A DNA stretch of 64,000 nt, from positions 124,001-188,000 of the IMG/VR virus record IMGVR_UViG_3300032268_000986, one strand, 5' to 3'. Both the position numbers and the translations under genes were made by a program. This document shows, piece by piece, positions 131 through 24,664 of this stretch. Each line of letters begins with the position of its first letter. Position 1 is the stretch's first letter. The notes beneath the pieces are model-generated. The model was not told the DNA's origin. It saw only the letters and a program-made list of their open reading frames with translations, and made no database searches.

Positions 131-1018
131 TTATTTTCCCCATCCATTGCCCCAGAGATCCACATGCAATCTTGGGCTGTAGTTGTAGCCACGCTCCAGG
201 GCCCAGTTAGCCACATTCACACGATTCTTCTCATAAGGCACAGCTACGCCGCCCTGGGGCATGACAAAAACTTTACCTTTGAATCCTGCCTCACGATACT
301 CAGACACAGCCTGATCAACTTCTTCAAAGTGTGCCGCACTGTCAACAACAAACTTGAGATACACTGTGCCAACCCACTCATAGTCCACGACAATCTTGGG
401 TCGGATGGCGTCTGCCCATGATTCGCCACTGGCACTCAACTTTGGACTCACACTGAATGTGAGTGCTGCCGGTGTTCTTTTTTGCGCCAAGGAGTTGTGT
501 TTGCTGTTCAAGGTCCAGTTCAACAAGTATTGTCTAAACGCAGGTTGTAGTTCCTGAGTGCCATTGGTTTCAAATGTTAAATTTTGCAAATTCAACATGT
601 CAGGATGTGACAGCAATTCTTCATACGCACGTTGCCAACCCAGCAACGGCTCACCACCCGTGATCACAAGATGTACATCGTTACCATTGCGTTGTAACCA
701 TGTATGATTGGGAGTAAGCGCCAACATGCGCTCTACTACTTCACCAGTATTATAATTGGGACTTAGATGTTTGTAAGCCGGATGCCATGATGCATAGCTG
801 TCACATCCGGTTTCTACCAGGGGTAGATCTTCAAACCGATTATACATGTGAACAACTTCGGCCACTTCATCTGCACCAGTGGATCGTTCTCCAGGTTTGC
901 ATCCAAACCCTGCACAGGTAAAGTTACATCCAAATGTTCTCAAAAACACACTGGGCACGCCAACAAATCGGCCTTCGCCCTGTGCAGAATAAAATAGTTC
1001 GCTGATTTTTAATTTCAT
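131..1018 (-). CDS. queE: 7-carboxy-7-deazaguanine synthase (radical SAM)
   Basis: ISELFYSAQGEG, FLRTFGCNFTC...GCDS, VITGGEPL, FETNGT, SVSPKL, YSPRLHVDLWG are QueE-family motifs; clustered with queD and folE. Confidence 0.93.
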   Translation of the reverse strand: MKLKISELFYSAQGEGRFVGVPSVFLRTFGCNFTCAGFGCKPGERSTGADEVAEVVHMYNRFEDLPLVETGCDSYASWHPAYKHLSPNYNTGEVVERMLALTPNHTWLQRNGNDVHLVITGGEPLLGWQRAYEELLSHPDMLNLQNLTFETNGTQELQPAFRQYLLNWTLNSKHNSLAQKRTPAALTFSVSPKLSASGESWADAIRPKIVVDYEWVGTVYLKFVVDSAAHFEEVDQAVSEYREAGFKGKVFVMPQGGVAVPYEKNRVNVANWALERGYNYSPRLHVDLWGNGWGK

Positions 1019-1043
1019 ACTGTATTGTACAATAAATTTAATG

Positions 1044-3011
1044 TCAAGTCAATGCCGCAGTTTGCCCACGACGTGCAAAAGTGTCAGTACTGCCCACACG
1101 CTCAATTGATGCTTTGCCAAAGTTACGTCGTCGAGCAAAATAAAACAGCTCTAGGAATCGCGGAAAACTCATGGTTTTTTCTTCGGGAAAGTCCAAGTGA
1201 TAGGTCACTGTTGCTTTTTCAAGTTTGGCATCAGTGGTGATGTATTCCCAAATGTTGTAGTCAAGTTTGAGCTGTTGCGGATAAGACGATATGGAATCAT
1301 ACGCCACTAGATATCTGCGTTGGAATCGCATGACATCGGCCAACAAGTCTTGTGGTAGATCGTAGCGTTGCATGAACTGTTCCAGTCTTTCAAATATGTT
1401 GTCATACTGATGATGCACATGCATGTTCAAGATTGAACGATGAATCAAGTTCCAGCCATGTATCTCAATGCCGCCAATGTCGGGGTGGCGTATTTGGCCT
1501 TGAGTCATCCAGTTTTTGTAATACTGTCTTACTTCTTGCATCTCTTGCACGAACCATGAGTCCTGTTGCAAGAACTCAAACAGATCATCATAGAACTTGC
1601 TGTAATCCACGCCCTGATACTTGTAGACCAGTCGGCTCAGCAGTGTGCTCACACCATTGATATGGAATGTGTTGATGTACCATGAAAACACTTCGGCATC
1701 CAGCATGATTTCGTCGGGCAGATCCTTGGTGGCAGTGATGATGTCAATGCCTTCTTCAATGTGTTCGTTTGAATAACTGCCTGAGAAGTAGTCAGTCACT
1801 CGTGCTGACTTGATCTGAAACAGTTTTTTCTGCAACAGATTCATTTCTGCGTTTTCCAGCAGTTGTGCTTGGAACACAGTGAGGCCAGTGTGATTGCCCA
1901 TGCGGAACAAGCGCCAGAAGTTGTCTTTCCATGTGGTAAGACTTTCGCCGGGCAATCCCAGAATCAGTTCGGTATAAGTGGGAATGTTGCGCTGTTCACA
2001 AAGTTCAAACACTTCTTCCAGCTTGTTCATTTCCATGTTTTTGCGTCGAATGTTTTCCAACACATCCACGTCAAGACTCTGCACCGACAAAGTAAGTCCT
2101 TGGTTGAACCCCGGGGCATCCAAGAGTTTCTTCACAATGTCTACTACTTCTTTTTTTTGATTCTTGGCCCAGGCCACTGAGAAAGTCTTGGGGTAACCGT
2201 ATTTTTCTTGAACTTCAATGATCTTGTCAGCAATCATATTGTCACGCTCGGGAAACATACCAAAGTTGGCATCTGTGATGGATATAAACCCACAACGATG
2301 CTTGGCCATCCATTCCAGTTCGTCAAACACTCGTTCCAGTCCAAAGTGCTTGACCTTGTTGTAGGTCAAGCTGCCCCAGTCGCAAAAGGTACAGGCAAAC
2401 GGACAACCACGATTGGTCTCCAGAGTGCCGTTCCATTCCACGTCGGGATTGTCAGCCATGATCTGATCAAATATTCCTGTTAGATACGGACTGGGCACTT
2501 CTCCCAGGGTTTCTATTCGTTTGGCGTCCGGCGTTTTTACTGCTTCTCCGCCGCGATTGATCAACAGGCCTGGAATATCTTCCCAGCGTTGATTTTCAAA
2601 GTTACGCAGTATTTCGCGAAATGTGATCTCGCCTTCAAAACAGATCACAAGATCCATGTAGGGCTCTTTGCGAAAAATATCAGGATCAGTCACAGCAGGT
2701 TCGGGCCCACCAAACACAATCAAACAATTGGGATTGAGTTCTTTGACCATGCGAGCCAGGGTGTAGTTGTACTGGTGATTCCACACATAGGTGCTGAATG
2801 CTACTACATGATTCTGCGCCAACTGTTGTGCCAAGGGCTCCACAGCATCTCGACGCCACACCATGTCAGTACATTCAAAGTTTTGTCCAATCCACTCATC
2901 GGCCCGGGCATAACTCCAGATCACTCCGGCAGAATAAGGCAAGTAATGGGCATTGAATTCTTTTGGCCCCTGTTGAAAGTTGGGTTGTACCCATGCAATT
3001 TTATATGTCAT
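1044..3011 (-). CDS. Cobalamin-dependent radical SAM protein
   Basis: N-terminal B12-binding-like domain (FSTYVWN, VFGGPEP), ETNRGCPFACTFCDWG CxxxCxxC motif, DANFG, ELILGLPGE. Confidence 0.88.
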   Translation of the reverse strand: MTYKIAWVQPNFQQGPKEFNAHYLPYSAGVIWSYARADEWIGQNFECTDMVWRRDAVEPLAQQLAQNHVVAFSTYVWNHQYNYTLARMVKELNPNCLIVFGGPEPAVTDPDIFRKEPYMDLVICFEGEITFREILRNFENQRWEDIPGLLINRGGEAVKTPDAKRIETLGEVPSPYLTGIFDQIMADNPDVEWNGTLETNRGCPFACTFCDWGSLTYNKVKHFGLERVFDELEWMAKHRCGFISITDANFGMFPERDNMIADKIIEVQEKYGYPKTFSVAWAKNQKKEVVDIVKKLLDAPGFNQGLTLSVQSLDVDVLENIRRKNMEMNKLEEVFELCEQRNIPTYTELILGLPGESLTTWKDNFWRLFRMGNHTGLTVFQAQLLENAEMNLLQKKLFQIKSARVTDYFSGSYSNEHIEEGIDIITATKDLPDEIMLDAEVFSWYINTFHINGVSTLLSRLVYKYQGVDYSKFYDDLFEFLQQDSWFVQEMQEVRQYYKNWMTQGQIRHPDIGGIEIHGWNLIHRSILNMHVHHQYDNIFERLEQFMQRYDLPQDLLADVMRFQRRYLVAYDSISSYPQQLKLDYNIWEYITTDAKLEKATVTYHLDFPEEKTMSFPRFLELFYFARRRNFGKASIERVGSTDTFARRGQTAALT

Positions 3012-3018
3012 TGGGTAT

Positions 3019-3852
3019 TTATTTTGATTTACTGTGTGGATATTTGAATTGCATCATCTGGCTGTTGATATCATTTTGTGCTAATTTCTCCCAGGGGTCC
3101 TGTGTGCCTTTGAATATATTTTGAAAGAATTCCACACTCATGCCAATGTTGTGCATGTGATTGGCCAACTTGATACAATCCTTGTGTCGCAATTCAATCA
3201 TACCGGCGCTATGGAAATCGTTGGGGTCATCAGGCTTGCCCTCTAACATGGGACGATTGCGGAACACATCATCGTTGTTGTTGCCTGTTAGATCATAACG
3301 ATCGTGCAACACATGTACGTCAATGCGCTGGTAAATGTCCAACATATAAGCCTGCTGGCTCACCCAGCCATCTTGTGTGGGATGTGGTGATATGTAGCCC
3401 AGTAACTCATACCACTTGCGCGGTACAATGGGAAAAATGCTATAGGGATGATCTCTGTGAGTGCGGAAAGACAAAAGTTTAAACTGATCAGTATAGCCGG
3501 CAATGACCTGATCCCAGTCCTGTGTTTCCATCACAGCATCATCATTCCACACTATCAACCAGTCAGCATCAGCATGTTTGGCCAAGGCATTGCTGTATTT
3601 GTGCAGGTTCACATAGCCCATGCGACGAAATTGCATGGCAATGAACTGAATGTGGTGTTGTTCCAACCAAGGTTTTAGGTGATCATGGAAATAAGTCAGG
3701 CCCACTTGATCATCATCATCAAACGCAAACAGCAGTTGAATTCGTTCTGGGCAGTCAGCAAGTTCAATCAAACTGCGAACACTGCGACCCAACATGTTGT
3801 CAGTACGTCCACGAGTAGCCAGCAGCACAGCAATGTCAAATCTAGATGTCAT
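3019..3852 (-). CDS. GT-A fold (family 2-like) glycosyltransferase
   Basis: IAVLLATRGR, FAFDDDD, WNDD acidic motif; start moved to MTSRFD behind GAGGAG RBS. Confidence 0.75.
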   Translation of the reverse strand: MTSRFDIAVLLATRGRTDNMLGRSVRSLIELADCPERIQLLFAFDDDDQVGLTYFHDHLKPWLEQHHIQFIAMQFRRMGYVNLHKYSNALAKHADADWLIVWNDDAVMETQDWDQVIAGYTDQFKLLSFRTHRDHPYSIFPIVPRKWYELLGYISPHPTQDGWVSQQAYMLDIYQRIDVHVLHDRYDLTGNNNDDVFRNRPMLEGKPDDPNDFHSAGMIELRHKDCIKLANHMHNIGMSVEFFQNIFKGTQDPWEKLAQNDINSQMMQFKYPHSKSK

Positions 3853-3853
3853 G

Positions 3854-4393
3854 TTACTCCTCGTAGGTTGCACTGTTTCCGGCATGTTCAAATACTTCAA
3901 CTGAACGCAGACGAACTTGTTCATTCATGAGATAACCAATGCTGTAGCCTTGTGATTGACCAGTGCGGTGGTTTGTGAATTCATAACGTTCGTCATCTTG
4001 AAATTTACGCAAGATACGAGCCATTTCTTCATATGCCAGTTTGGCAAATTTTTCACAACCCACACCATTGTCGAATATGCGTATATCACAAATGCCACCT
4101 CGATCTTGTATCCCAAGATCGGCCATGCTCTTGAACAGATCCACATGAGGATCATCACGTGCCACCAGTAGAGTATGATCAAACATGTTTTTAGCCCAGT
4201 CATGGAAGGACTTTAGCACGTCCGAATCTATGACCCAGTTGCAAACATCTAGAGACTCAGACTCAAACACCAAACGAAAGCCAATGGAATAACCATGAAG
4301 CAGACTACGGTGACTGTGGCGACTACGCCACTGTCTAAACACGCAGGAAAATCCTTGATCAGTGCCGTAGGTTTTTGTACTAGTATATTTCAT
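3854..4393 (-). CDS. Second, degenerate QueD-like protein (Cys replaced by Arg)
   Basis: Aligns with adjacent QueD (STKTYG, FRQW, LHGYS, NWV.D, FDH, EKFA, EHAGNSA.YE); HSHRSLLHG instead of HSHCHLLHG; start moved to MKYTSTK. Confidence 0.8.
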   Translation of the reverse strand: MKYTSTKTYGTDQGFSCVFRQWRSRHSHRSLLHGYSIGFRLVFESESLDVCNWVIDSDVLKSFHDWAKNMFDHTLLVARDDPHVDLFKSMADLGIQDRGGICDIRIFDNGVGCEKFAKLAYEEMARILRKFQDDERYEFTNHRTGQSQGYSIGYLMNEQVRLRSVEVFEHAGNSATYEE

Positions 4394-4868
4394 CCAACAA
4401 GTCCTCGTTCCAGTTGTTATGACCTTCGTAGATGGCGCTGTTGGCACCGTGTTCAGCGCACTCAACTCGTACACAATAACAACGATCGTTGGTCTTTTGT
4501 CGAATCAAGTCATCAGCAAAGTTAAAGGCATGTTCAGCAAACTTCTCTGCACCCACGCCATCAAAAATTCTAATCTCAGCTAGATCCAATGCTTCCAGTT
4601 CTTGGAATTTGGCCAAGTGTGGATCATTTTGATCCAAGGCTAGCTTGTGATCAAAGTGATCTTCCAGCCATGCTTTCAGCGGTTTGAGTCCGCCAAAGTC
4701 CACAGCCCAGTTCTTGTTGTCTAATTGATCACATCCAAATGTGAATGTAAACGCCAGACTGTAGCCATGTAGCAAATGACAGTGTGAATGATCTGCGTTG
4801 GGTTGACGGAACACCGCTGACAGACCAATGTTGTGTCCGTAATGTTTTGTTGAGTAATATTTTGCCAT
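4380..4868 (-). CDS. queD: 6-carboxy-5,6,7,8-tetrahydropterin synthase
   Basis: HSHCHLLHGYS (CxxxHG), VDFGGLK, DHFDHK, AEKFA motifs. Confidence 0.9.
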   Translation of the reverse strand: MAKYYSTKHYGHNIGLSAVFRQPNADHSHCHLLHGYSLAFTFTFGCDQLDNKNWAVDFGGLKPLKAWLEDHFDHKLALDQNDPHLAKFQELEALDLAEIRIFDGVGAEKFAEHAFNFADDLIRQKTNDRCYCVRVECAEHGANSAIYEGHNNWNEDLLDEIY

Positions 4869-4940
4869 TGTGATTCCCCTATGTTAGATTATAGCATAGG
4901 CAGCAGAGTTTGTATAGCGGGATGAAGCCAAAGACCGCTT
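4869..4940 (-). promoter_or_regulatory. Structured queD leader (preQ1-I-like stem-loop plus RBS-occluding hairpin) overlapping a possible sigma70 promoter
   Basis: AGCGG/CCGCU stem, A-rich tail, CCUAUG/CAUAGG hairpin over AGGGGA RBS; also TATACA-17-TATAAT with an extended -10 TG. Confidence 0.55.
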
Positions 4941-4948
4941 AAAAATAC

Positions 4949-5344
4949 TTATGCAGGCAGTTGATAGCCGTCTGCTTTGTAGTTGGCTTGCCCGGCAATA
5001 ACTCCACGCACACCGCCAATGGGATCAGCACAGTCACCCACACGGCGTGGTATCAAATGCACATGTGGGTACATCACAGTTTGCCCTGCTTCTCGACCCA
5101 TGTTGATGCCAATGTTAAATGCCGCACATTCACCTGTGGCTACCATTCTACGACCATGCCGCATGGCTGATTCAAAACATTCTATGATTACATCATCGGT
5201 ATTGTACTTGGGCACAAACAACAAGTGTCCATGCGTGACTGGAAACCGGTCCTGAAACACCGAGACATGATAGTCTGATAATTCACCTACCAACAGATCC
5301 CAGGGTGCAACACCATCTTTTTGTGCTTGTTCTAGGTCGGTCAT
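4949..5344 (-). CDS. HIT family nucleotide hydrolase
   Basis: FPVTHGHLLFVPK, GQTVMYPHVHLIPR (HxHxx variant of the histidine triad). Confidence 0.88.
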   Translation of the reverse strand: MTDLEQAQKDGVAPWDLLVGELSDYHVSVFQDRFPVTHGHLLFVPKYNTDDVIIECFESAMRHGRRMVATGECAAFNIGINMGREAGQTVMYPHVHLIPRRVGDCADPIGGVRGVIAGQANYKADGYQLPA

Positions 5345-5346
5345 GT

Positions 5347-6030
5347 TTAACCTCTGGTACAAGCATTGACAATGTTCATGAACTCAGTGCGCACTGATGG
5401 GTCACTGCGGAACACACCACCTAGTCGACTGGTCACAGTGCTGGATCCTGTGTCCTCAACACCACGACTTTTCACACAGTAGTGTTGAGCATTGATTACC
5501 ACGCCAATGTCATCAGTTTCCAAGATGTATTGCAAGGCATGATACACTTGTTCAGTCAGTCGTTCTTGAATTTGAGGACGCTTGGAGAAGTACTCTACGA
5601 TGCGATTGATCTTGCTGAGTCCCAGAACTTTTTGCTTGGGAATATAGCCCACAGTGGCCAAGCCGTCTATGACAACAAAGTGATGTTCACAGTTGCTTTG
5701 TACCGAAACGTTGCGTTCCACAACCATTTCATCATACTTCATTTTGTTGTCTACTGTGGTACACTTGGGAAACGCCTCGTAGTCCAGACCCCAGAAGATT
5801 TCGTTTACATACATCTTGGCCACACGCTTGGGTGTGTCACGCAGGCTGTCGTCATCTAGATCCAGACCCAGTACTTCCATGATGTGTTTGAAATCTTTTT
5901 CAATCAGTTCAATTTTATCTTTGCGATCAACTGAATGTTGAAATGTTGGAGTTTCCACACCACACTTGATCAAGTGCTGATGTACTAGTTGACCCAACTC
6001 GGGGTCGCATTTGGTTTTGTTATAGCTCAT
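5347..6030 (-). CDS. folE: GTP cyclohydrolase I
   Basis: TPKRVAKMY, SNCEHH, LGLSKINR, RPQIQERLT, HYCVKSRGV. Confidence 0.96.
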   Translation of the reverse strand: MSYNKTKCDPELGQLVHQHLIKCGVETPTFQHSVDRKDKIELIEKDFKHIMEVLGLDLDDDSLRDTPKRVAKMYVNEIFWGLDYEAFPKCTTVDNKMKYDEMVVERNVSVQSNCEHHFVVIDGLATVGYIPKQKVLGLSKINRIVEYFSKRPQIQERLTEQVYHALQYILETDDIGVVINAQHYCVKSRGVEDTGSSTVTSRLGGVFRSDPSVRTEFMNIVNACTRG

Positions 6031-6097
6031 TTTGATATCCTTCCTTACACGGATGTTAATTTTGAAGTTTGCTACCGTTGTGTAGCATGTTTATTTA
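6031..6097 (-). promoter_or_regulatory. TAAATA late-promoter motif and hairpin leader of folE
   Basis: TAAATA overlapping the upstream stop; UGCUAC/GUAGCA hairpin; AAGGAAGGA RBS. Confidence 0.5.
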
Positions 6098-6676
6098 GTC
6101 AGTGATTGTGATGGTTCTACAATCTGGATACATAACATGCTTGGGTGGCTCACTAACATATTTTGCCAGCAACTCACTGCCATGCTGGGCTTCTTCTATT
6201 GTGGGTTTGTAGTGATAGCCCACGCGGAAAACACGTTGGTCCTGCCAAGGGGCAATATTCAAATCCCTGCCATCATAACGCATGCGGATAATATCCTCAT
6301 AGGCCTGGTGGTCATCAAGTAGTATAGCACCACCGCGGCCTATTTGTAAAGGCTTAGTGTGTCCAAAACTCAAGCACTGCATGGCACCACCCTTGTACAT
6401 GTCCTGCTCTAGCCTGCGAGCACTATCCCAGATTCTAGTGCCCACAAACTCATATTCGCCTTGCCAGGACGTTGCCGTCAACTCATAATCAATGCCCAGT
6501 CGATGCATGATCATGGGCACACTCAAATAAGTGTAGCAGGTAAATGAACACTGCTTGACTTGATCATATCTCATGCACAGTTCAATTGCATGTGTGCAGC
6601 AATCGGTCATGATGGCATAGGGGGCGCCAGTGAACTTGGCCAGGCTTTTTTCAAATTTTAATATTTCGTCAAACAC
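6095..6676 (-). CDS. Compact DegT/DnrJ/EryC1/StrS-like PLP aminotransferase
   Basis: FEKSLAKFTGAPYA, THAIEL, WDSA, LSFGHTKPLQIGRGGAIL; GTG start overlapping the upstream stop inferred. Confidence 0.8.
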   Translation of the reverse strand: MFDEILKFEKSLAKFTGAPYAIMTDCCTHAIELCMRYDQVKQCSFTCYTYLSVPMIMHRLGIDYELTATSWQGEYEFVGTRIWDSARRLEQDMYKGGAMQCLSFGHTKPLQIGRGGAILLDDHQAYEDIIRMRYDGRDLNIAPWQDQRVFRVGYHYKPTIEEAQHGSELLAKYVSEPPKHVMYPDCRTITITD

Positions 6677-7667
6677 AATTTCTCTCCGGAAAAAAATCTT
6701 GTTTCTCTCCCTGTCGGGCAAGATCCAATGTAATGCAGTGTATGCCACCGTCCCAGAAATATCTATGTCTAAATGGGACAATGTGAGGGGTGATGCCATG
6801 ACGATCAAACGCCTCGAACACTTTTTCATTATAGTTATTGACAATCACATTGGTTGGATCGATGGTCAGCATGTTGACATCAAACACTGTTTCTTCAACA
6901 TAGCCCACCCAATGACTCAACCAGGTTTCCACGCAATCAATTACATCTTGGTCCTGTTCAAAGCCTGGAATCCACCAACGGCCTTGGTTCTTTTGTTTGA
7001 GAGTCATGAAACCTTGTACCTTGGCCCAGCTTTGGTCAGGCAAGTATACAACTTCCCAATCAGGGAATGTTTCTGTATAAGTGGGTATGTCATGCAGACT
7101 TACAATCAATCCCGGAGCCACTGGACAAAATGTACCATCAGTGTGACCAAAAGTTTCAATCACATGGGATCGATAACCAGGAAACTGTGCAGCCGCATAT
7201 TTTTTCATCTCTGCGTATGGCTCTGCTTGATAGCTACCAAAGTACAAGTCCTTGCCGATGCGACTGACCATGGCACCATTGGTCCATGAGTTTTGCATCA
7301 AGTGGGCGTTGTTGCCTTGTTGCTTGACAAGATTCAAAATTGGAGACCAGGTAGTTTGGTCATAGTAACTGTGATAAAACTCATTACCAATCATGATGGC
7401 ATTATCACGTGGCTGCATTGGTGGGCGAGTAATAGTTCCGTATTGGTTAAACGGTTCAGCCGGTAATTCGGGCCTAACCACTGTGACATCAAACTCTTGA
7501 AGTTTGTTGATTATGGCTTGGTAGTCTTCTTCGGTCTCTTGAGCTATTTTTTCAAACAACTCACGAACATGCGGAACCTTGATCCATGAATAAAACTCAG
7601 GTGGATAACTACGGCCCACTGCACACACCTGCAATGGATCCCAGGGTTGATGTACGCTGTAAGTCAT
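6669..7667 (-). CDS. Amidinotransferase family protein (glycine/inosamine-phosphate amidinotransferase-like)
   Basis: WDPLQVCAVG, QPRD, HTDG, DVNML, HRYFWDGGIHCITLD with C-terminal catalytic Cys. Confidence 0.85.
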   Translation of the reverse strand: MTYSVHQPWDPLQVCAVGRSYPPEFYSWIKVPHVRELFEKIAQETEEDYQAIINKLQEFDVTVVRPELPAEPFNQYGTITRPPMQPRDNAIMIGNEFYHSYYDQTTWSPILNLVKQQGNNAHLMQNSWTNGAMVSRIGKDLYFGSYQAEPYAEMKKYAAAQFPGYRSHVIETFGHTDGTFCPVAPGLIVSLHDIPTYTETFPDWEVVYLPDQSWAKVQGFMTLKQKNQGRWWIPGFEQDQDVIDCVETWLSHWVGYVEETVFDVNMLTIDPTNVIVNNYNEKVFEAFDRHGITPHIVPFRHRYFWDGGIHCITLDLARQGEKQDFFPERNCV

Positions 7668-8623
7668 CGCTGATACCAGGCCCATGCATGGCGAATCATG
7701 TCATCTAATTCAAACTGTCGCCAACTTCCGGCAACCTGGGAAAATTTGGCAGCACTGGCTGTGAGCACAGCCGGGTCTCCGGGCCTAGCATTACCTAGCA
7801 CAACTTTTAATTTTCGCCCGGTTACACGTTCAGCTGCGGCAATGATTTCTCTATTGCTAATACCGTTGTTGGAACCCAGATTGTAGACACCAGAAGGCAG
7901 TACTGGATTCAATGCCATGACATGTGCCTGGGCTATGTCTGCCACATGCACGTAGTCACGTACACATGTGCCATCCAGTGTGGGATAGTCTACACCATTT
8001 AATATAAATTCACGATCATCTCTCATGGCTTCCAACACTCTGGCAATGATGTGTGTAGCACCGGGCCTTTGCCCATGACGTTGTTGTGGATCAGCACTGC
8101 AAGCATTGAAATAACGGAATGCCACATACTCAAGCCCATAAGCACGATGATAACTTTTCAACATCATTTCAGTCATGTACTTGCTTTCGCCGTAAGGTGA
8201 GATTGGTTGAGCCACGTCAACTTCATGACAGGGATTCATCATGGGTTCACCATATACTGCGGCCGATGAACTAAAAATAAATCGAGTACGGGGCATGGCC
8301 TGACGAATAATGTCTAGTAAGATCTTGGTCTTGATCACATTGTTTTCGTAGTATGAAGATGGATCTGCAATGCTGGGACCTACCAAACTGGTACCACCAC
8401 AATGAATCACAGCAGAGGGCCGTGCCACAACAATATGTTTCAGTGCATCGTCGCTGGCAAAGTCAGCTAACAAAAATTCGTACCGGTCTGAAGGCTCTAT
8501 CTGTAGAGTTGATGGCATTTTTTGATTGTCAATACCCAGAACACTGTGACCAGCGTCGAGCAATGCCATTACAATTTGTCCGCCAATGTAGCCAGCGGCC
8601 CCTGTTACAATTATTTTATTCAT
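7664..8623 (-). CDS. galE: UDP-glucose 4-epimerase-like NAD-dependent epimerase
   Basis: VTGAAGYIG, FSSSAAVYG, SPYGESK (YxxxK), FRYFNA, RDYVHVAD. Confidence 0.9.
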   Translation of the reverse strand: MNKIIVTGAAGYIGGQIVMALLDAGHSVLGIDNQKMPSTLQIEPSDRYEFLLADFASDDALKHIVVARPSAVIHCGGTSLVGPSIADPSSYYENNVIKTKILLDIIRQAMPRTRFIFSSSAAVYGEPMMNPCHEVDVAQPISPYGESKYMTEMMLKSYHRAYGLEYVAFRYFNACSADPQQRHGQRPGATHIIARVLEAMRDDREFILNGVDYPTLDGTCVRDYVHVADIAQAHVMALNPVLPSGVYNLGSNNGISNREIIAAAERVTGRKLKVVLGNARPGDPAVLTASAAKFSQVAGSWRQFELDDMIRHAWAWYQR

Positions 8624-8624
8624 A

Positions 8625-9470
8625 TTATCCACAATGTTTAATACATTTTTGATTGGTCAAATCAGTGTCAACTTCTTGAATGTGTATTACATTTTGAAAT
8701 TTTTCACTTTTTTCTAAATAACAACATCTACTAATACTACCGTCAGCTGACACGTACACACTTGGAATAGACAAATGCATACAATTTTTAGCTTCAACAG
8801 TAGTTTTGACTCGATTAACTGTTGCTTGCATAAAAGTAGCCGGCAACAATTCAAACTCTTCGCCTGTTTGATAATGCCTGGCTTTTTTATTTGTACGATA
8901 GGTGTGCGCTAGACAAAACTTTTTAAAATTCATCTTTTGGCTCAACATTAGGCATTCAGGAATCTGGTGCTCGTTATGCCGGTAAGGGATAAACTGCCAA
9001 ATTGCATTTCCACCGTGATCAATAAATGCTTGTGCATTTTTTATGATCTTGTTAAAATCTGTGCCTTGCCTGTAGATTTCATGTACGCCAGCTAGTCCAT
9101 CAATACCAAACCAAACTTCATGATTCATGTCGGCAAGTTGTTGTGCAAACTCGGTCCACCAACTTTCGTTACGTAAACTACCATTGGTATGAAGTTGTAT
9201 TTTTTTACCGTATTTTTTTGAAATTGCAATCAAGTCAGTAATGTAGTCAGACGCAATGGGGTCACCGTAATTTCCACACAGTTGTACAGTATGAGAGTTT
9301 GGGAATTGTACAATAATCTCCTCATAGCGTTCCGGCATCAAATCCTGCTTGACAAGATTCGGATTGACACCAAATCCGTTTAGAGTTCGTGGACATGCTG
9401 GGCACCATGCATTGCATTTTGAGCTTGCTTCTACATGTATCCATCCAACGTCCTTGACAGATAGCGTCAC
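8625..9470 (-). CDS. Radical SAM protein with C-terminal SPASM/twitch-like Cys cluster
   Basis: SKCNAWCPACPR, GNYGDP, HTNGS, CCY; paralog of 24992..26035; GTG start overlapping the upstream TGA inferred. Confidence 0.85.
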   Translation of the reverse strand: MTLSVKDVGWIHVEASSKCNAWCPACPRTLNGFGVNPNLVKQDLMPERYEEIIVQFPNSHTVQLCGNYGDPIASDYITDLIAISKKYGKKIQLHTNGSLRNESWWTEFAQQLADMNHEVWFGIDGLAGVHEIYRQGTDFNKIIKNAQAFIDHGGNAIWQFIPYRHNEHQIPECLMLSQKMNFKKFCLAHTYRTNKKARHYQTGEEFELLPATFMQATVNRVKTTVEAKNCMHLSIPSVYVSADGSISRCCYLEKSEKFQNVIHIQEVDTDLTNQKCIKHCG

Positions 9471-10195
9471 TCTTCTATCCTTCTCGGTTTTTCCCATATC
9501 AGTCTCAACGATCCATTGAGATCCCCCAATGTTTGTCCTACATGATTTTCTACTACCAGCCAATGAAACGGCAATTGACGAATTGTTTGGTCAAAAAACT
9601 CAGCCAACTGCCAACTGGTTGGTTCAGCAGTTCCGAGATATTCAATAAACTGATCTGGGCGATTGGTTCTATTAACCATGCCTTGCACTGGTAGTGTCAC
9701 ACATGCCCGTCCACCAGGTGCCAACAAAAGATCAACGTCTAACAAGGATGCAGTAAGCGATCCTACATGATCATGATAGAGACTGTTAAAAGCAGCAACT
9801 GAATCAAACATGCCTGCATGTTCCACAGCGTACTGGTGATCGAAAGCAACAATTTCATCAGCATGCCCTGCAAACTTTTGGTCTATATCTATACCATGCA
9901 CTTGCGGATAAAATTTCTTAAAAATATTCATACCACATCCAATGTCAAGTATGGTAGCTGGTGACTTTTCTGCCACAATGTCGTAATATCGAAAAATTCC
10001 CATACCAAACATAGGTGTAAGAAATCGATCTCTAGGATTAATACCACGCATATCAGCATCGGCAAAAGTAGAATAACCAAATTGTATTCGATCCCCGGTA
10101 TTAAATGCATTACGAACACGTTCTTCGTATTGTTGTTTCTTGGCCGGAGTCCAGAACTCAATTTCGTTATAAGGGTTGATACATAACAATGACAT
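9467..10195 (-). CDS. Class I SAM-dependent methyltransferase
   Basis: ILDIGCG motif I, GIDID, LLAPGGR. Confidence 0.8.
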   Translation of the reverse strand: MSLLCINPYNEIEFWTPAKKQQYEERVRNAFNTGDRIQFGYSTFADADMRGINPRDRFLTPMFGMGIFRYYDIVAEKSPATILDIGCGMNIFKKFYPQVHGIDIDQKFAGHADEIVAFDHQYAVEHAGMFDSVAAFNSLYHDHVGSLTASLLDVDLLLAPGGRACVTLPVQGMVNRTNRPDQFIEYLGTAEPTSWQLAEFFDQTIRQLPFHWLVVENHVGQTLGDLNGSLRLIWEKPRRIEE

Positions 10196-10206
10196 TGATT
10201 ACCTTT

Positions 10207-11454
10207 TTATGATTCAATTTTTACCACTTGATATTTTTCATGGGCCACGTGATCACGATAGCGAGCACCTGAACGATTCCATGGTGTTGCTCGACACTCC
10301 ATGCCACCTTCGGCTATGGTTCCAGCAGTCTGCATGATGTCAATCACACGATCAACAGTGGCATTGTTCCAGTCTGAGATCAAGCCCATGTTGTGATGAG
10401 GTTCACGCAACAACAACTGCATCTTGTGGTAGGCATCATCTATGCTCCAAGGGACATAAAGCCTGTTTGGATCGTTGGCAAAGGTTTCGGGGAAACTACG
10501 ATAGGCAGGATAAAGCACGTTACAGCCAAGAGTGTCAGCCTCGGAAACTGTGTTAGAGACCCAGTCTTGTAAAGCACAATTAAACAACACACGAGTATTA
10601 TTGAGATGAGCATAGTATTCGTTCTTGCCAATGTTGTCGTAAATCTTTAGCTTGCCTTCAGCTTCCATGCGGCGGGCACGTTCAACAAACTCGGGATTGT
10701 TGCTTCGCAAAGGGCCGCCTGAGTATACTGCAAACTCACAGGGCTCACTGGTAAGTTCGCCATACATCTCAATCAGGTCCATGAAAAAGCCCGGTTGCTT
10801 CTCTTGGTCAAAGCGAGCTGCAAACCCCACTCTCCGAGGACGCTGATCAAACGGCTGGATATTTTCTACTCCACCAATACGTTCTAACACTTCCTCTTTG
10901 CCAAATGCCAGGCCAGATATGTTGTAGATGGGAGCCGTCCAACCAGCAATACGCATGTGGGCAACCATTTCTTCGTTTGTGGCAAGAACCGCACCACCAG
11001 AGAATGCCACCATCTCATTGACCATTTTTTCATACAGGTCCATCCACCGGTTCATGCCCCAGACATGCACAAAGTCATCAGGATCAATGGCCTGTGCTAG
11101 ACAACGCACAAAGATTCGTGGGCACTGCTCGCGAGGAATCTGATTCATGATGTAACCAAGACTTTCAAAGCCTGGTTGGAACATGTCTTCAAAGTAGATC
11201 ACATCGTCACCGGCGATGTCTCCGTTCTTCATCAGCTGAACCAGGTTCATCATTTGACTCATGGCAAAGTAACTGCGACCATGTGCGTCTAACACTTGCC
11301 CAACTGAGATGGCCTGTGTGTTGTCAATTGTAGTTCCGGGAACATACACAACATCAAGACCTCTACGATCAAACACGCGGCGGTTCCACTCTGTGAGTTG
11401 TAGAGTGTAGCGAGCTTCGTAACTTTCCAAGCCCATGTAAAATAGTTTTCTCAT
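10207..11454 (-). CDS. GT-B (family 4-like) glycosyltransferase
   Basis: GFAARFDQEKQP, SNTVSEADTLGC (E-x7 region), AYRSFPE. Confidence 0.8.
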   Translation of the reverse strand: MRKLFYMGLESYEARYTLQLTEWNRRVFDRRGLDVVYVPGTTIDNTQAISVGQVLDAHGRSYFAMSQMMNLVQLMKNGDIAGDDVIYFEDMFQPGFESLGYIMNQIPREQCPRIFVRCLAQAIDPDDFVHVWGMNRWMDLYEKMVNEMVAFSGGAVLATNEEMVAHMRIAGWTAPIYNISGLAFGKEEVLERIGGVENIQPFDQRPRRVGFAARFDQEKQPGFFMDLIEMYGELTSEPCEFAVYSGGPLRSNNPEFVERARRMEAEGKLKIYDNIGKNEYYAHLNNTRVLFNCALQDWVSNTVSEADTLGCNVLYPAYRSFPETFANDPNRLYVPWSIDDAYHKMQLLLREPHHNMGLISDWNNATVDRVIDIMQTAGTIAEGGMECRATPWNRSGARYRDHVAHEKYQVVKIES

Positions 11455-11455
11455 C

Positions 11456-12340
11456 TCAGTCCTTTAGTAACCTAATAGTATTATTATACAACGTATTAAA
11501 CAAATGTCTAGTGTTGGATGAATTGTATTTGCTCATACTCTCATTGTATTCTTGAATAATTTTGTTTTTCTCGTATGACATCTTGCCATGCGGTGATTGA
11601 TAGTGTTCAATTACATATTCTGTGGGCATGATCAACACAGATTTTTTTAAAACATATTTAAAAAACAACGAATGATCAAGCACCAACTTGGACATATTGG
11701 TCCAATCGTTATCAATCCAGGTTTGAGTAATAGCAGGCACCTGGAAGTCATAGTTATCCAGGGGGCTTCCTTTTACGTTGTGGAGCACACGATTTGATGC
11801 TATCATTATCCACAAACTACTGGCGCACTCCCATTGGTCTTCTCTCCAATTTAACACAGACGATTCAGCATTTAGAAATCGTTGATCAATACGTCTTGTA
11901 TGTTCAAAACTTTTTTTCCCTTGTGCTTTCCAGGCTTGCTCTAGGTGAGAACTTGCGGTTCTACCGGTAGTAATGATAACACACTCGGCAACAGAATTTG
12001 TGGGCAATACAAAGTCGCACACAATCTCATCTGAAAAACAAAGGTTATTCACCACAGCATTGTTTAACCAAGTAACTTGATCATACGGGTGACACTCGGG
12101 CAACAAGTTTGCTAGATCGTCGGCATGCGTGGATATATGTCTCACAATCCGCACTCCTAGCTCTCGTGCCTGTTGCAGATTTTCTGTAGAAGCGTCTGCG
12201 TGGCAAATTTCATACAGCCCCGGTTTAATATGGTACTTGGCCGACTCTGCCCAGTTACCATGAAACTGCAAATAACTAAATTTGTTTTTGTAAAATTCAA
12301 CTATTCTGCGGTTGCCGTTATGAAAAATGCAAACACTCAT
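11456..12340 (-). CDS. Hypothetical protein with a sulfotransferase-like P-loop segment
   Basis: IITTGRTASSHL resembles the PAPS-binding 5'-PSB motif; AT-richer than its neighbours. Confidence 0.4.
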   Translation of the reverse strand: MSVCIFHNGNRRIVEFYKNKFSYLQFHGNWAESAKYHIKPGLYEICHADASTENLQQARELGVRIVRHISTHADDLANLLPECHPYDQVTWLNNAVVNNLCFSDEIVCDFVLPTNSVAECVIITTGRTASSHLEQAWKAQGKKSFEHTRRIDQRFLNAESSVLNWREDQWECASSLWIMIASNRVLHNVKGSPLDNYDFQVPAITQTWIDNDWTNMSKLVLDHSLFFKYVLKKSVLIMPTEYVIEHYQSPHGKMSYEKNKIIQEYNESMSKYNSSNTRHLFNTLYNNTIRLLKD

Positions 12341-12564
12341 GCAGGGCGGTATCCTGCAAAGCGGCGTAGATCTTCACTCCACATGTTCTTGGCGTTCTTG
12401 CCTTGTGAGAACTTGTTGTACTGTTGCCAGGCATAGGCCTTGAAATTGTAGAGATCGGCTTCGTTGTAGCGATAGCCGTGATCTACACAGAACTCTCGAA
12501 GTTTGTCCAAGTCGTCAAACAGGTCACGCACACGAGGATTGGGTTTGATAGTAAATTTTGCCAT
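12337..12564 (-). CDS. Small hypothetical protein
   Basis: 75-aa ORF tightly packed in the operon. Confidence 0.7.
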   Translation of the reverse strand: MAKFTIKPNPRVRDLFDDLDKLREFCVDHGYRYNEADLYNFKAYAWQQYNKFSQGKNAKNMWSEDLRRFAGYRPA

Positions 12565-12566
12565 GA

Positions 12567-13016
12567 TTAAATTTTAATTGAAAGATTGGGACGAGTGAGT
12601 TCATATTTAATAAAGCAGCCGTTCTCACCATCTTCGGCTATTTCAATCCAGACTGTACGTCCGGGATACTTTTGCACAATCTGATCATATAGATCGTCTG
12701 CGATCATTTCACATGATTTGTAGTCTAACGACAATACACCTTGGTCGCTATGATACAGTCTTTCCAACCAGCGTTTGAATTGTATAAACTCCACATCTCG
12801 GTCATTGTGGAATACGTCAATCCAAACCCTAAAATGAAAAATATGGCGATGAGGATAGCCCAAAAACGAAACATCATATTCATCTCCTGTTGCTAGTTGT
12901 GGGTCTTGTGAGGCTGCTGGATACTTATGGATACCTTCTTTGCGGAACGTGATCCAGATTTTTCGTTCAGCATGTTGTTTGATTCGGTCAACTGTTTCTC
13001 GTTCTTGTTGGTTCAT
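12567..13016 (-). CDS. dpdL: DpdL-like T-fold protein (candidate 7-carboxy-7-deazaguanine decarboxylase)
   Basis: LGYPHRHIF fits the LxxxHRHxF signature as I recall it; KSCEMIA parallels the T-fold PTAENIA motif; near the TGT-like gene. Confidence 0.72.
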   Translation of the reverse strand: MNQQERETVDRIKQHAERKIWITFRKEGIHKYPAASQDPQLATGDEYDVSFLGYPHRHIFHFRVWIDVFHNDRDVEFIQFKRWLERLYHSDQGVLSLDYKSCEMIADDLYDQIVQKYPGRTVWIEIAEDGENGCFIKYELTRPNLSIKI

Positions 13017-15051: not shown

Positions 15052-15057
15052 GCGTGA

Positions 15058-15780: not shown

Positions 15781-15810
15781 AATTTCTCCTTGTTTAACAG
15801 TATATGCTTT

Positions 15811-24501: not shown

Positions 24502-24664
24502 TCTTGTTCCTTTTGTATTCCCGAGGCGTATTAGGCGTAGGATCAGTTGTATATTTACCATTTAGTAGAGAACCGCCTGATCTTGATACCATGCCCATGG
24601 GTTGTGCCACAGTGGCAATTGATCCTGAAGTAGTAGTCTCTGTCACAATGTCATGTACTTTCAT
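24464..24664 (-). CDS. Small hypothetical protein, putative internal head protein
   Basis: Starts MKVHDIVTE, a capsid-targeting-like motif. Confidence 0.65.
   Translation of the reverse strand: MKVHDIVTETTTSGSIATVAQPMGMVSRSGGSLLNGKYTTDPTPNTPREYKRNKNVSGHFKNSPGK

What the first reader, a model, noticed from the sequence alone, without database searches (positions are those of the whole stretch)
1044..12340. Tailoring enzymes interleaved in the deazaguanine cluster: possible new hypermodified base
Seen: a B12 radical SAM gene and a GT2 gene sit between queE and queD. DegT-like, amidinotransferase, GalE, radical SAM, MTase, GT4 and sulfotransferase-like genes sit between folE and dpdL/dpdA, with overlapping start/stop codons. 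Established: class B radical SAM enzymes methylate unactivated carbons; DegT plus amidinotransferase builds amino- then guanidino-sugars (streptidine-type chemistry). Inference: C7 of deazaguanine could be methylated or decorated with an unusual (guanidino) sugar. Equally possible: these enzymes glycosylate virion proteins or host LPS.
Basis: inference. Interest (0 to 1): 0.65.

Follow-up and report, generated by a model that had tools for sequence, protein, structure and literature searches.

The report
Sugar-adding genes inside deazaguanine DNA cluster
A freshwater jumbo phage carries one tightly packed gene block for replacing guanine in its DNA with 7-deazaguanine, and a glycosyltransferase that sits beside dpdL in many unrelated phages suggests the base carries a sugar, which has not been reported for any DNA purine in the papers I could search.

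Summary
Window 131-15051 (minus strand) is one block of 18 abutting or overlapping genes. They are QueE, a B12 radical SAM enzyme, a GT-A-like protein, two QueD paralogs, HIT, FolE, a 193-aa mini DegT, an amidinotransferase, GalE, a radical SAM enzyme, a methyltransferase, a GT-B/GT4-fold glycosyltransferase, three unknowns (294, 75 and 165 aa), DpdL and a distant 514-aa DpdA. The genome has no QueC.

The tailoring genes split into two classes.
- **Core genes:** in 43 related loci that span DpdA to FolE, GT-B is present in 42, GalE in 42 and mini-DegT in 32.
- **Strain-specific additions:** amidinotransferase 3/43, the 294-aa protein 1/43, B12 rSAM 2/43, and rSAM plus MTase 0/43. The rSAM/MTase pair looks like a low-GC insertion.

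The GT-B family lies beside dpdL in differently arranged cultured phages (PA5oct, ACP17, Xanthomonas BUDD, Phosso) and in 35/35 loci retrieved with GT-B queries. It is absent from phiST-type phages, whose DNA holds plain dDG. A profile search found 955 representative clusters. Of six sampled, four had a dpdL/PTPS-like gene directly upstream, and the other two contigs were uninformative.

Most likely the 7-deazaguanine in this DNA is glycosylated, with strain-specific decoration of the sugar. No chemistry was tested. The "sulfotransferase" and "GT2" labels remain weak.

The parts
131..1018 (-). QueE-like 7-carboxy-7-deazaguanine synthase (295 aa)
   Evidence: phrog_2076 at E 9.5e-50. NCBIfam QueE models match the N-terminus. 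The translation shows QGEG and a Cys-rich motif.
1044..3011 (-). Cobalamin-dependent (class B) radical SAM enzyme, 655 aa. The C-terminal ~250 aa are unassigned. Accessory gene.
   Evidence: Pfam B12-binding 4.8e-10 and Radical_SAM 1.5e-11. NF033712 KedN5 family at 1.5e-81, but 274 bits against a 700-bit cut-off. Presence and position vary in relatives.
3019..3852 (-). GT-A-like putative glycosyltransferase (~277 aa; the ORF runs to 3924). Core gene of the clade.
   Evidence: phrog_14945 'glycosyltransferase' at 1.3e-9. Conserved TRGRT, FDxDD and NDDA motifs in 8 orthologs. The family has 3025 clusters, none with a Pfam domain. No PDB sequence match.
3854..4393 (-). QueD paralog whose catalytic Cys is replaced by Arg (HSHRSLLHGY)
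   Evidence: PTPS Pfam 4e-11 and phrog_2389. Orthologs in relatives keep the Cys. Only the window and L003, which have an extra QueD, carry C->R.
4380..4868 (-). QueD (6-carboxytetrahydropterin synthase), with Cys retained
   Evidence: PTPS 3.5e-14 and phrog_2389 at 1.3e-41; motif seen.
4949..5362 (-). HIT-family nucleotide hydrolase/transferase. Conserved in the clade; role unassigned.
   Evidence: Pfam HIT 1.7e-09. Present in relatives at 51-88% identity and in L169.
5347..6030 (-). FolE, GTP cyclohydrolase I
   Evidence: Pfam 5.3e-62; NF006824 at 324 bits, above its cut-off.
6095..6676 (-). Mini DegT-like PLP enzyme, 193 aa, about half the usual size. Core gene.
   Evidence: PF01041 at 1.6e-12. 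Invariant Lys in SFGxxKP and Asp in WDSA across 24 orthologs. GTG start at 6676 after GGAGA. 5733 homolog clusters, all about 193-208 aa. Present in 32/43 spanning loci.
6669..7685 (-). Amidinotransferase (338 aa). Accessory gene.
   Evidence: phmmer against PDB: HsvA 8.5e-10, AGAT, StrB1, SxtG. C-terminal GGIHC. Same position in L003 and L169. Present in 3/43 spanning loci. Paralogs exist elsewhere in the genome.
7664..8632 (-). GalE-type UDP-hexose 4-epimerase (SDR). Core gene.
   Evidence: Pfam Epimerase 1.3e-50; TIGR01179 galE at 297 bits against a 262-bit cut-off. Present in 42/43 spanning loci.
8625..9497 (-). Radical SAM enzyme with a Cys-rich C-terminus (the ORF runs to 9563). Strain-specific insertion.
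   Evidence: Radical_SAM 9.3e-07, phrog_21308 at 2.9e-24, CxxxCxxC motif. Absent at this position in 43/43 relatives. GC3 is 0.33. A 31%-identical paralog lies at 24992-26035.
9467..10195 (-). Class I SAM methyltransferase-like protein (242 aa). Strain-specific insertion together with the radical SAM gene.
   Evidence: Methyltransf_23 at 1.8e-05, below its cut-off. DIGCG motif. 0/43 relatives. GC3 is 0.31.
10207..11454 (-). GT-B (GT4-like) glycosyltransferase, the dpdL-associated family. Core gene.
   Evidence: No family hit. AF2 pLDDT 75, pTM 0.80. Foldseek finds BshA, MshA, PimA and PglA at E 4e-9 to 1e-7. BFVD finds the ACP17 GT1-domain protein at 7e-12. Present in 42/43 loci. Adjacent to dpdL in other lineages. 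955 representative clusters.
11456..12340 (-). 294-aa protein of unknown function. The 'sulfotransferase-like' label is not verified. Accessory gene.
   Evidence: No Pfam, NCBIfam or PDB hit. Atlas 0.79-0.80 to NKWYS/Sulfotransfer_2 clusters is noise level. Found only in L003/L004.
12337..12564 (-). Conserved 75-aa protein of unknown function
   Evidence: Present in 43/43 spanning loci, always after DpdL.
12567..13016 (-). DpdL, a QueD-like T-fold protein and proposed CDG decarboxylase
   Evidence: Motif LGYPHRHIF fits LxxxHRHxF (motif from PMC10516641). tblastn finds ACP17 at 56% and phiST at 34%, E 7e-8.
13013..13510 (-). Conserved 165-aa protein of unknown function. Weak QueE-like shape without the Fe-S cysteines.
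   Evidence: Present in 43/43 loci. Homolog in ACP17 at E 2e-12. AF2 pLDDT 87. No clear PDB fold: Foldseek E >= 0.03, VIA Z <= 6.4. QueE recurs at TM 0.54-0.60 and Z 5.2-5.6.
13507..15051 (-). Distant DpdA-family DNA guanine transglycosylase (514 aa)
   Evidence: DSGGFQ and FDCASPFLATANGQ motifs. Homologs lie in the deazaguanine clusters of PA5oct and Vibrio phage 2.275.O. hhalign to ACP17/BUDD-type DpdA: 89% probability, E 2e-6. Atlas 0.93 to a viral TGT-like cluster. Against: no PF01702 hit and no PDB sequence hit.

Best explanation
The block is a 7-deazaguanine DNA-modification operon with a built-in glycosylation module.

**Shown by homology.**
- FolE, QueD and QueE make 7-carboxy-7-deazaguanine (CDG).
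- The genome has no QueC, so the pathway leaves the preQ0 route at CDG.
- DpdL, the proposed CDG decarboxylase, and a distant DpdA are present.

**Inferred.**
- DpdA exchanges guanine in phage DNA for the deazaguanine base.
- The dpdL-associated GT-B glycosyltransferase then puts a sugar from a UDP-sugar on that base. It could instead act on the free base before insertion.
- GalE and the mini DegT-like PLP enzyme supply or alter the UDP-sugar, by 4-epimerisation or via a 4-keto intermediate to a 4-amino sugar.
- The GT-A-like protein may add a second sugar.
- In this phage and its nearest kin, accessory enzymes probably decorate the sugar further: the amidinotransferase between GalE and mini-DegT, the 294-aa protein, the radical SAM/MTase pair and the B12 radical SAM enzyme. 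This would give strain-specific variants, as in other phage hypermodification systems.

The acceptor atom is unknown. The candidates are the nucleophilic C7 of 7-deazaguanine (a C-glycoside), or the carboxylate of CDG if DpdL does something other than decarboxylation.
For: 1. One co-directional block with overlapping or abutting genes.
2. In 43 IMG/VR loci spanning DpdA to FolE (29 DpdA clusters at 90% identity), the 165-aa protein, DpdL and the 75-aa protein are each present in 43, GT-B in 42, GalE in 42 and mini-DegT in 32.
3. GT-B homologs sit next to dpdL in differently ordered clusters:
   - PA5oct: DpdA, GT-B, DpdL.
   - ACP17: DpdA, GT-B, DpdL, QueE.
   - Xanthomonas BUDD: GT-B, DpdA, DpdL, QueE.
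   - Phosso: DpdL, GT-B, then FolE one gene further on.
4. GT-B-centred scans from two other lineages gave 35/35 loci with dpdL adjacent, mostly with overlapping stop and start.
5. A profile search of 1.84 billion representatives found only 955 clusters, so this is a distinct family rather than generic GT4. Of six sampled divergent members, four have a dpdL/PTPS-like gene directly upstream, three of them with FolE and/or QueE nearby; the other two contigs were uninformative.
6. phiST-type loci, where dDG was shown chemically (PMC10516641), have dpdL and a short 259-aa DpdA3 but no GT-B. GT-B goes with the long 425-514-aa DpdA types.
7. PA5oct DNA resists G-containing restriction enzymes, and its base is unidentified (PMC12191111).
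8. The genome has no thymidylate-synthase-like hydroxymethylase, so no hm-pyrimidine acceptor is available.
9. GT-B fold with NDP-sugar-type relatives.
Against: - No chemical or read-level evidence of any modification. Only assembled contigs of public runs were available.
- DpdL's activity has never been reconstituted, and 7-deazaguanine offers no ordinary hydroxyl acceptor.
- GT-B has no Pfam hit, and its nearest solved folds act on small molecules or lipids. It could therefore work on a soluble intermediate.
- Unrelated genes (an S11 peptidase, an FG-GAP protein, Bax1-I) are also inserted in this region in relatives, so position alone does not prove pathway membership.
- The accessory genes are rare in relatives. 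The amidinotransferase and the radical SAM enzyme have paralogs elsewhere in the genome.
- The related loci are phylogenetically non-independent.
- DpdA fails PF01702.
Confidence: 0.55

Rival explanations
1. The GT-B enzyme glycosylates a soluble pterin or deazapurine intermediate rather than DNA. For example, it could act like cyanobacterial UDP-glucose:tetrahydrobiopterin glucosyltransferase on a product of FolE and the T-fold enzymes. The glycoside would then be a cofactor, a storage form or a decoy and would never enter DNA.
For: - The fold search lists BH4 glucosyltransferase (5ze7/5zer, TM 0.55) among GT-B matches, and the nearest folds all use small-molecule acceptors.
- The cluster has FolE plus three PTPS-like T-fold proteins.
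- SDR genes, which could be sepiapterin-reductase-like, occur in relatives and in PA5oct.
- DpdL chemistry is unproven.
Against: - The BH4 enzyme is one of hundreds of equal GT4 matches, at rank 35.
- GT-B always travels with DpdA and QueE, whose only known role in phages is DNA deazaguanine modification.
- GT-B presence tracks the DpdA type, which suggests the transglycosylase and the GT share a substrate.
Confidence: 0.15
2. The sugar and tailoring enzymes serve another target, such as virion proteins, host LPS or capsule, or a secreted metabolite. They would lie in the deazaguanine block only because this is a permissive region of the replication module. The DNA base would be plain dDG.
For: - Unrelated cargo genes are inserted at the same places in relatives: an S11 carboxypeptidase, a 794-aa FG-GAP protein and Bax1-I.
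- An amidinotransferase homolog lies beside baseplate and portal genes in another jumbo phage.
- This genome has three more amidinotransferase paralogs, one group next to a UDP-glucose dehydrogenase.
- A paralogous radical SAM enzyme with an adjacent methyltransferase sits 15 kb away.
Against: This cannot explain the GT-B/dpdL adjacency kept through at least six different gene orders and polymerase types. It also cannot explain the 42/43 conservation of GT-B and GalE inside the block. It remains plausible only for the accessory genes.
Confidence: 0.15
3. The glycosyltransferases modify a hydroxymethylated pyrimidine, as in T-even phages, and are unrelated to deazaguanine.
For: GT-B enzymes glucosylate hmC in T4-like phages. 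A cyanophage 'DNA alpha-GT' appears at rank 26 of the viral fold search.
Against: The 343-kb genome, 99% complete by CheckV, has no thymidylate-synthase/hydroxymethylase homolog (PF00303). The GT-B family is linked to dpdL, not to hydroxymethylases.
Confidence: 0.03

Closest known systems
Cellulophaga phage phiST dDG system (FolE, QueD, QueE, DpdL, DpdA3; Cui et al. 2023, PMC10516641)
   Same: Both have FolE, QueD and QueE without QueC, plus DpdL with the LxxxHRHxF motif (34% identity, E 7e-8) and a divergent DpdA near the DNA polymerase gene.
   Different: phiST has a short 259-aa DpdA3 and no glycosyltransferase, GalE, DegT or other tailoring genes, and its DNA holds plain dDG. Here the DpdA is 514 aa with no detectable sequence match to the phiST protein, and a sugar module is built in.
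Pseudomonas jumbo phage PA5oct (Wroclawvirus) modified-G cluster
   Same: Shared genes are the polymerase, a structural protein, DpdA (36% identity), a GT-B homolog (23%, E 9e-12), DpdL (56%), QueE and RNase H. Its DNA resists G-containing restriction enzymes (PMC12191111).
   Different: PA5oct lacks mini-DegT, the amidinotransferase, the GT-A-like protein, the B12 rSAM enzyme, HIT and the 75-aa and 165-aa proteins. It has a PRTase-like gene and a truncated SDR instead. Its base has not been identified chemically either.
Acidovorax phage ACP17 and Xanthomonas phage BUDD clusters
   Same: DpdL, a long DpdA (424-437 aa), QueE, FolE and a GT-B of the same family directly adjacent. ACP17 also has a homolog of the 165-aa protein.
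   Different: These are minimal clusters with no sugar-nucleotide enzymes, so they presumably use a host UDP-sugar. They are T4-like phages of 156-199 kb.
T-even phage glucosyl-hydroxymethylcytosine system
   Same: After replication, GT-B enzymes put a sugar from UDP-glucose on a modified base, and the sugar varies between strains. This is established knowledge, not tested here.
   Different: In T-even phages the acceptor is the hydroxyl of hmC, made by a dCMP hydroxymethylase. No such enzyme exists here, and the modified base is a purine analogue.
Mannosyl- and galactosyl-queuosine in animal tRNA
   Same: To my knowledge these are the only known glycosylated 7-deazaguanine derivatives.
   Different: They occur in tRNA, on the cyclopentenediol hydroxyl of queuosine, and are made by unrelated eukaryotic enzymes. 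No queuosine side chain can be made here because QueC, QueF and the later enzymes are absent.
Streptidine-type amidinotransfer (StrB1) and DegT sugar aminotransferases
   Same: The amidinotransferase matches StrB1 and AGAT with the catalytic Cys motif present. The DegT-like enzyme keeps the PLP lysine.
   Different: StrB1 acts on inosamine phosphate, not on a nucleotide sugar. The DegT-like protein here is half length. A guanidino sugar on DNA is pure inference.

Membership tests
Phage 7-deazaguanine DNA modification cluster (Dpd type) | DpdA/TGT-like transglycosylase | tested here: met
   For: DSGGFQ and FDCxxP...NGQ motifs; hhalign to ACP17/BUDD-type DpdA at 89% probability, E 2e-6 over 301 columns; homologs inside the deazaguanine clusters of PA5oct and Vibrio phage 2.275.O; Atlas 0.93 to a viral TGT cluster. 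Caveat: PF01702 does not match and there is no PDB sequence hit.
Phage 7-deazaguanine DNA modification cluster (Dpd type) | CDG pathway genes FolE, QueD and QueE | tested here: met
   FolE is above the NCBIfam cut-off. QueD and QueE are identified by Pfam and PHROG hits.
dDG branch (Cui et al. 2023) | No QueC, and DpdL with the LxxxHRHxF motif | tested here: met
   No PF06508 match in the whole genome. LGYPHRHIF motif. Similarity to phiST and ACP17 DpdL.
dDG branch (Cui et al. 2023) | dDG present in virion DNA | not testable with these tools
   Only assembled contigs of public runs were available. This needs LC-MS.
GT-B / GT4 glycosyltransferases | Two-Rossmann-domain GT-B fold | tested here: met
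   AF2 pTM 0.80. Foldseek finds BshA, MshA, PimA and PglA at E 4e-9 to 1e-7, TM about 0.6.
GT-B / GT4 glycosyltransferases | Match to Pfam Glycos_transf_1 or a related model | tested here: not met
   No Pfam, NCBIfam or PHROG family for the window protein. Some distant family members carry weak PF00534 or PF13524 hits.
DegT/DnrJ/EryC1 sugar aminotransferases | Pfam match with the PLP lysine and the pyridine-binding Asp | tested here: met
   PF01041 at 47.8 bits, above the 19.8-bit cut-off. Lys and Asp are invariant in 24 orthologs.
DegT/DnrJ/EryC1 sugar aminotransferases | Full two-domain architecture of about 370 aa | tested here: not met
   The protein is 193 aa. All 120 listed homologs, out of 5733, are 192-208 aa.
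Amidinotransferases (AGAT/StrB1 type) | Sequence similarity and the C-terminal catalytic His-Cys | tested here: met
   HsvA 8.5e-10, AGAT 2.9e-8, StrB1 8.5e-7. GGIHC motif. No Pfam family reached E 0.01.
Class B (cobalamin) radical SAM methyltransferases | B12-binding domain plus radical SAM domain | tested here: met
   Both Pfam domains score above their cut-offs. The KedN5 family cut-off is not reached, 274 against 700 bits. The substrate is unknown.
Sulfotransferases | Any significant family or fold match | tested here: inconclusive
   No Pfam, NCBIfam or PDB hit. Atlas 0.79 is at the level of shuffled sequences.
T4-type glucosyl-hmC system | dCMP/dUMP hydroxymethylase (thymidylate-synthase fold) | tested here: not met
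   No PF00303 match in the 343-kb genome.

The most novel reading that the evidence does not exclude
Virion DNA of this freshwater jumbo-phage clade, and of cultured phages PA5oct, ACP17, BUDD/X1 and Phosso, carries a glycosylated 7-deazaguanine. That would be the first sugar-bearing purine analogue reported in any DNA. The sugar would be made by a dedicated dpdL-associated GT-B family, possibly as a C-glycoside at C7. In this phage it would be further aminated, amidinated and methylated.
Probability: 0.35. Interest if true: 0.9.

Novelty: new variant of a known kind. Interest (0 to 1): 0.72.

Why it matters
Eight 7-deazaguanine bases are known in phage DNA, and none carries a sugar. A glycosyltransferase family that travels with dpdL through many phage lineages (955 representative clusters; thousands of metagenomic homologs of the companion genes) points to an abundant, undescribed DNA base in freshwater, soil and clinical-host phages.

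It could also explain two open points: why dpdL plus dpdA of ACP17 did not give dDG in E. coli, and what the unidentified "modified G" of PA5oct is.

The prediction can be tested at once, because four carriers are in culture. Such a base would bear on restriction and glycosylase evasion, on how these genomes behave in sequencing, and on enzymology if the link is a C-glycoside to a nucleobase.

Tried and rejected
- **megablast of 16.8 kb against GenBank phages:** no match.
- **PADLOC models:** no match on ten proteins of the locus (window 6669-7685 and 10207-19418).
- **Profile or sequence searches of PDB:** nothing useful for GT-B, DpdA, the GT-A-like protein or the 294-aa protein.
- **The 165-aa protein:** a good model (pLDDT 87) but no convincing fold match (Foldseek E >= 0.03, VIA Z <= 6.4). 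The recurring QueE resemblance is only a lead.
- **The 294-aa protein:** Atlas result at noise level.
- **Public runs:** only Logan contigs from lake and freshwater metagenomes, with no raw or long reads. No miscall or kinetic signal of modified G could be sought.
- **hm-pyrimidine acceptor:** rejected, because the genome has no PF00303 match.
- **GT-B near Vibrio phage 2.275.O DpdA:** none found. That phage has a QueC/QueF-type pathway.
- **Whole-record search of the 361-kb contig L167:** not possible, because the record is not held.
- **Genetic code and restricted material:** no alternative genetic code was needed.

Full report
**Source and gene map.** The window is bases 124001-188000 of a 342,865-bp IMG/VR virus record that CheckV rates 99% complete. 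Near-identical DNA occurs only in a few metagenome runs. Fragments of relatives occur in lake and freshwater metagenomes.

All genes from 131 to 19418 lie on the minus strand, and most are separated by overlaps or by gaps of 11 nt or less. Read in the direction of transcription, the order is:
1. Family-B DNA polymerase (16752-19418).
2. A 314-aa unknown.
3. A 240-aa protein, whose PA5oct and Phosso homologs are annotated as virion structural proteins.
4. DpdA (13507-15051).
5. A 165-aa unknown.
6. DpdL (12567-13016).
7. A 75-aa unknown.
8. A 294-aa unknown.
9. A GT-B glycosyltransferase (10207-11454).
10. A methyltransferase.
11. A radical SAM enzyme.
12. GalE.
13. An amidinotransferase.
14. 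A mini DegT-like protein.
15. FolE.
16. A HIT protein.
17. QueD.
18. A QueD paralog.
19. A GT-A-like protein.
20. A B12 radical SAM enzyme.
21. QueE (131-1018).

These assignments rest. Downstream of QueE in the genome lie a 142-aa unknown, a cytidylyltransferase-like protein, two unknowns, RNase H, an HhH-GPD protein and a MazG-like protein.

- Family models confirm the B12 radical SAM enzyme, GalE, FolE, QueD, QueE, the radical SAM enzyme and, weakly, the methyltransferase.
- The amidinotransferase has no Pfam hit. It matches solved amidinotransferases (HsvA 8.5e-10, AGAT, StrB1, SxtG) and keeps the C-terminal His-Cys.
- The "GT4" has no family hit in any library. Its AlphaFold model, built from 33 orthologs (pLDDT 75, pTM 0.80), is a GT-B fold nearest to BshA, MshA, PimA and PglA.
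- The DegT-like gene is really a 193-aa protein. It starts at a GTG at 6676 behind a GGAGA Shine-Dalgarno sequence and overlaps the amidinotransferase stop codon. It keeps the Schiff-base lysine and the pyridine-binding aspartate but is half the length of normal DegT enzymes. The family is very large: 5733 clusters, and all 120 listed are 192-208 aa.
- The "GT2" rests only on a PHROG hit (1.3e-9) and conserved DxD-type motifs.
- The "sulfotransferase-like" label could not be verified.

**The deazaguanine core.**
- DpdL carries LGYPHRHIF, the LxxxHRHxF motif that defines DpdL in Cui et al. 2023. It matches DpdL of ACP17 at 56% and of phiST at 34%.
- The 514-aa protein has the TGT-type DSGGFQ and FDCxxP...NGQ motifs.
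- Its homologs lie in the deazaguanine clusters of PA5oct and Vibrio phage 2.275.O.
- A profile-profile comparison with the ACP17/BUDD type of DpdA gives 89% probability, E 2e-6, over 301 columns.
- It fails PF01702.
- The genome has no QueC, so the pathway stops at CDG and goes through DpdL.

**Conservation in relatives.** IMG/VR holds 523 relatives of this DpdA, of which 80 loci were fetched. Forty-three of them span DpdA to FolE, representing 29 DpdA clusters at 90% identity. Counts:

| Gene | Present in spanning loci |
|---|---|
| 165-aa protein | 43/43 |
| DpdL | 43/43 |
| 75-aa protein | 43/43 |
| GT-B | 42/43 |
| GalE | 42/43 |
| mini-DegT | 32/43 |
| amidinotransferase | 3/43 |
| B12 rSAM (between DpdA and FolE) | 2/43 |
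| 294-aa protein | 1/43 |
| methyltransferase | 0/43 |
| radical SAM | 0/43 |

- The GT-A-like gene is present in all three loci that reach as far as QueE, and HIT recurs in many of the longer loci.
- The radical SAM/methyltransferase pair is missing from the closest relative (L003, DpdA 96% identical). It also has the lowest GC3 of the block, 0.31-0.33 against 0.40-0.53, so it is a recent insertion.
- The variable slots in relatives hold more radical SAM enzymes, an SDR, a PRTase and DUF6071. They also hold clearly unrelated cargo: an S11 carboxypeptidase, an FG-GAP protein and Bax1-I. Position in this block is therefore not proof of pathway membership for accessory genes.

**The main finding: GT-B and dpdL travel together.** GT-B homologs lie next to dpdL in phages with quite different gene orders:
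- PA5oct: DpdA, GT-B, DpdL.
- ACP17: DpdA, GT-B, DpdL, QueE.
- Xanthomonas BUDD: GT-B, DpdA, DpdL, QueE.
- Phosso: DpdL, GT-B, then FolE one gene further on.

Further evidence:
- Among 41 IMG/VR loci fetched with ACP17 DpdL, about half carry GT-B, usually overlapping dpdL.
- Scans that started from GT-B of two other lineages returned 35 loci, and every one has dpdL adjacent.
- A profile search of 1.84 billion representative proteins found only 955 clusters at E <= 0.001. This is a distinct family, not generic GT4.
- Of six divergent members sampled, four have a dpdL/PTPS-like gene immediately upstream, three of them with FolE and/or QueE nearby, and two of those lie in phages that also carry UDG/PolA-type or clamp-type replication genes. 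The other two contigs were too short or had no DNA available. None contradicted the pattern.

Loci without GT-B are mostly of the phiST type, with a short 259-aa DpdA3. Those are the phages where plain dDG was shown by mass spectrometry. GT-B goes mainly with the long DpdA types of 425-514 aa, though one lineage (L099-L101) pairs a partly similar 505-aa DpdA-like protein with no GT-B in reach.

In the searchable literature:
- Cui et al. never mention a glycosyltransferase.
- They report that ACP17 dpdL plus dpdA gave no dDG in E. coli.
- PA5oct is known only to have a "modified G".
- No paper found describes a glycosylated deazaguanine in DNA.

**Interpretation.** The GT-B enzyme is very probably an integral part of the dpdL branch of deazaguanine DNA modification. 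The simplest reading is that the deazaguanine base carries a sugar, added either on DNA or on the free base before a large-pocket DpdA inserts it. In minimal clusters (ACP17, BUDD, and the L114 metagenome lineage) a host UDP-sugar would be used.

In this clade GalE, mini-DegT and the GT-A-like protein suggest a modified or second sugar. The GalE, amidinotransferase, mini-DegT order recurs in L003 and L169.
- The amidinotransferase is rare in the clade.
- It has three further paralogs in this genome, one group next to a UDP-glucose dehydrogenase.
- A homolog sits among baseplate genes in another jumbo phage.

Nothing links the B12 radical SAM enzyme to C7. The acceptor atom is unknown. A C-glycoside at the nucleophilic C7, or a glycosyl ester of CDG, are inferences from general chemistry.

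**Rivals.**
- The GT could act on a soluble pterin or deazapurine. BH4 glucosyltransferase is among the fold matches.
- The accessory enzymes could serve virion or host glycans.
- The hm-pyrimidine route is excluded, because the genome has no thymidylate-synthase-like gene.

**Limits.**
- No chemistry was done and no read-level signal was available, because only assembled contigs were held.
- The related loci are not independent samples.
- The GT-B model is of moderate confidence.
- DpdL's own activity is unproven.

Noticed in passing
window 3854-4393 compared with 4380-4868: There are two QueD paralogs. In relatives with a single copy, the long-insert type keeps the catalytic Cys (HSHCSLLHGY). 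Only this phage and L003, which gained a second QueD, carry Cys->Arg in that copy. This suggests loss or change of function after duplication.
   Followed up: partly
window 20547-21848 (-), 24061-24561 (-): An S-adenosylhomocysteine hydrolase (Pfam 6.9e-130) and a ferritin-like protein lie just beyond the polymerase. They could support heavy SAM and Fe-S enzyme use during infection.
   Followed up: no
window 24992-26655 (+): A second radical SAM-SPASM enzyme, 31% identical to the one in the cluster, is followed by a methyltransferase-like gene. Relatives carry this copy upstream of the polymerase on the opposite strand.
   Followed up: partly
own genome G000:C1:233695-236534 and 63182-64198 (loci L175, L176): Three further amidinotransferase paralogs (37-46% identity) exist in this genome. 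One group sits with a UvdE-like endonuclease and a UDP-glucose/GDP-mannose dehydrogenase. Four copies of this family in one phage genome is unusual.
   Followed up: partly
window 13013-13510: The conserved 165-aa protein between DpdA and DpdL models well (pLDDT 87) but has no clear known fold. QueE recurs among weak shape matches, yet the protein lacks the Fe-S cysteines. A homolog precedes DpdA in ACP17.
   Followed up: yes
window 15058-15780: The 240-aa protein (phrog_12062) lies just upstream of the 514-aa type of DpdA in this clade, PA5oct, Phosso and Vibrio phage 2.275.O, directly or with one or two small ORFs between. In PA5oct it was found in virions by mass spectrometry.
   Followed up: no
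L083 13229-13825 (own genome, just downstream of QueE): A cytidylyltransferase-like nucleotidyltransferase (PF01467 at 2e-12, with a weak pantoate-ligase-like N-terminus) follows QueE. Homologs also sit beside QueE or near DpdL in clusters that lack GT-B (L106, L109, L110, L120, L121). It may belong to the deazaguanine pathway itself.
   Followed up: partly
L083 9573-10353 (own genome): An HhH-GPD-type DNA glycosylase-like protein and a MazG-like pyrophosphohydrolase lie a few genes downstream of the cluster. phiST also has a MazG next to DpdL.
   Followed up: no
related loci, e.g. L066 20011-20580; PA5oct EST35_0321: A phosphoribosyltransferase occurs in the cluster in six relatives and in PA5oct. 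This hints that some lineages turn the deazaguanine base into a nucleotide.
   Followed up: no
L178 1030-2142: In one metagenome contig, the 370-aa gene between FolE and GT-B matches the DpdL profile (E 5.7e-22). This would be a longer or fused form of DpdL.
   Followed up: no
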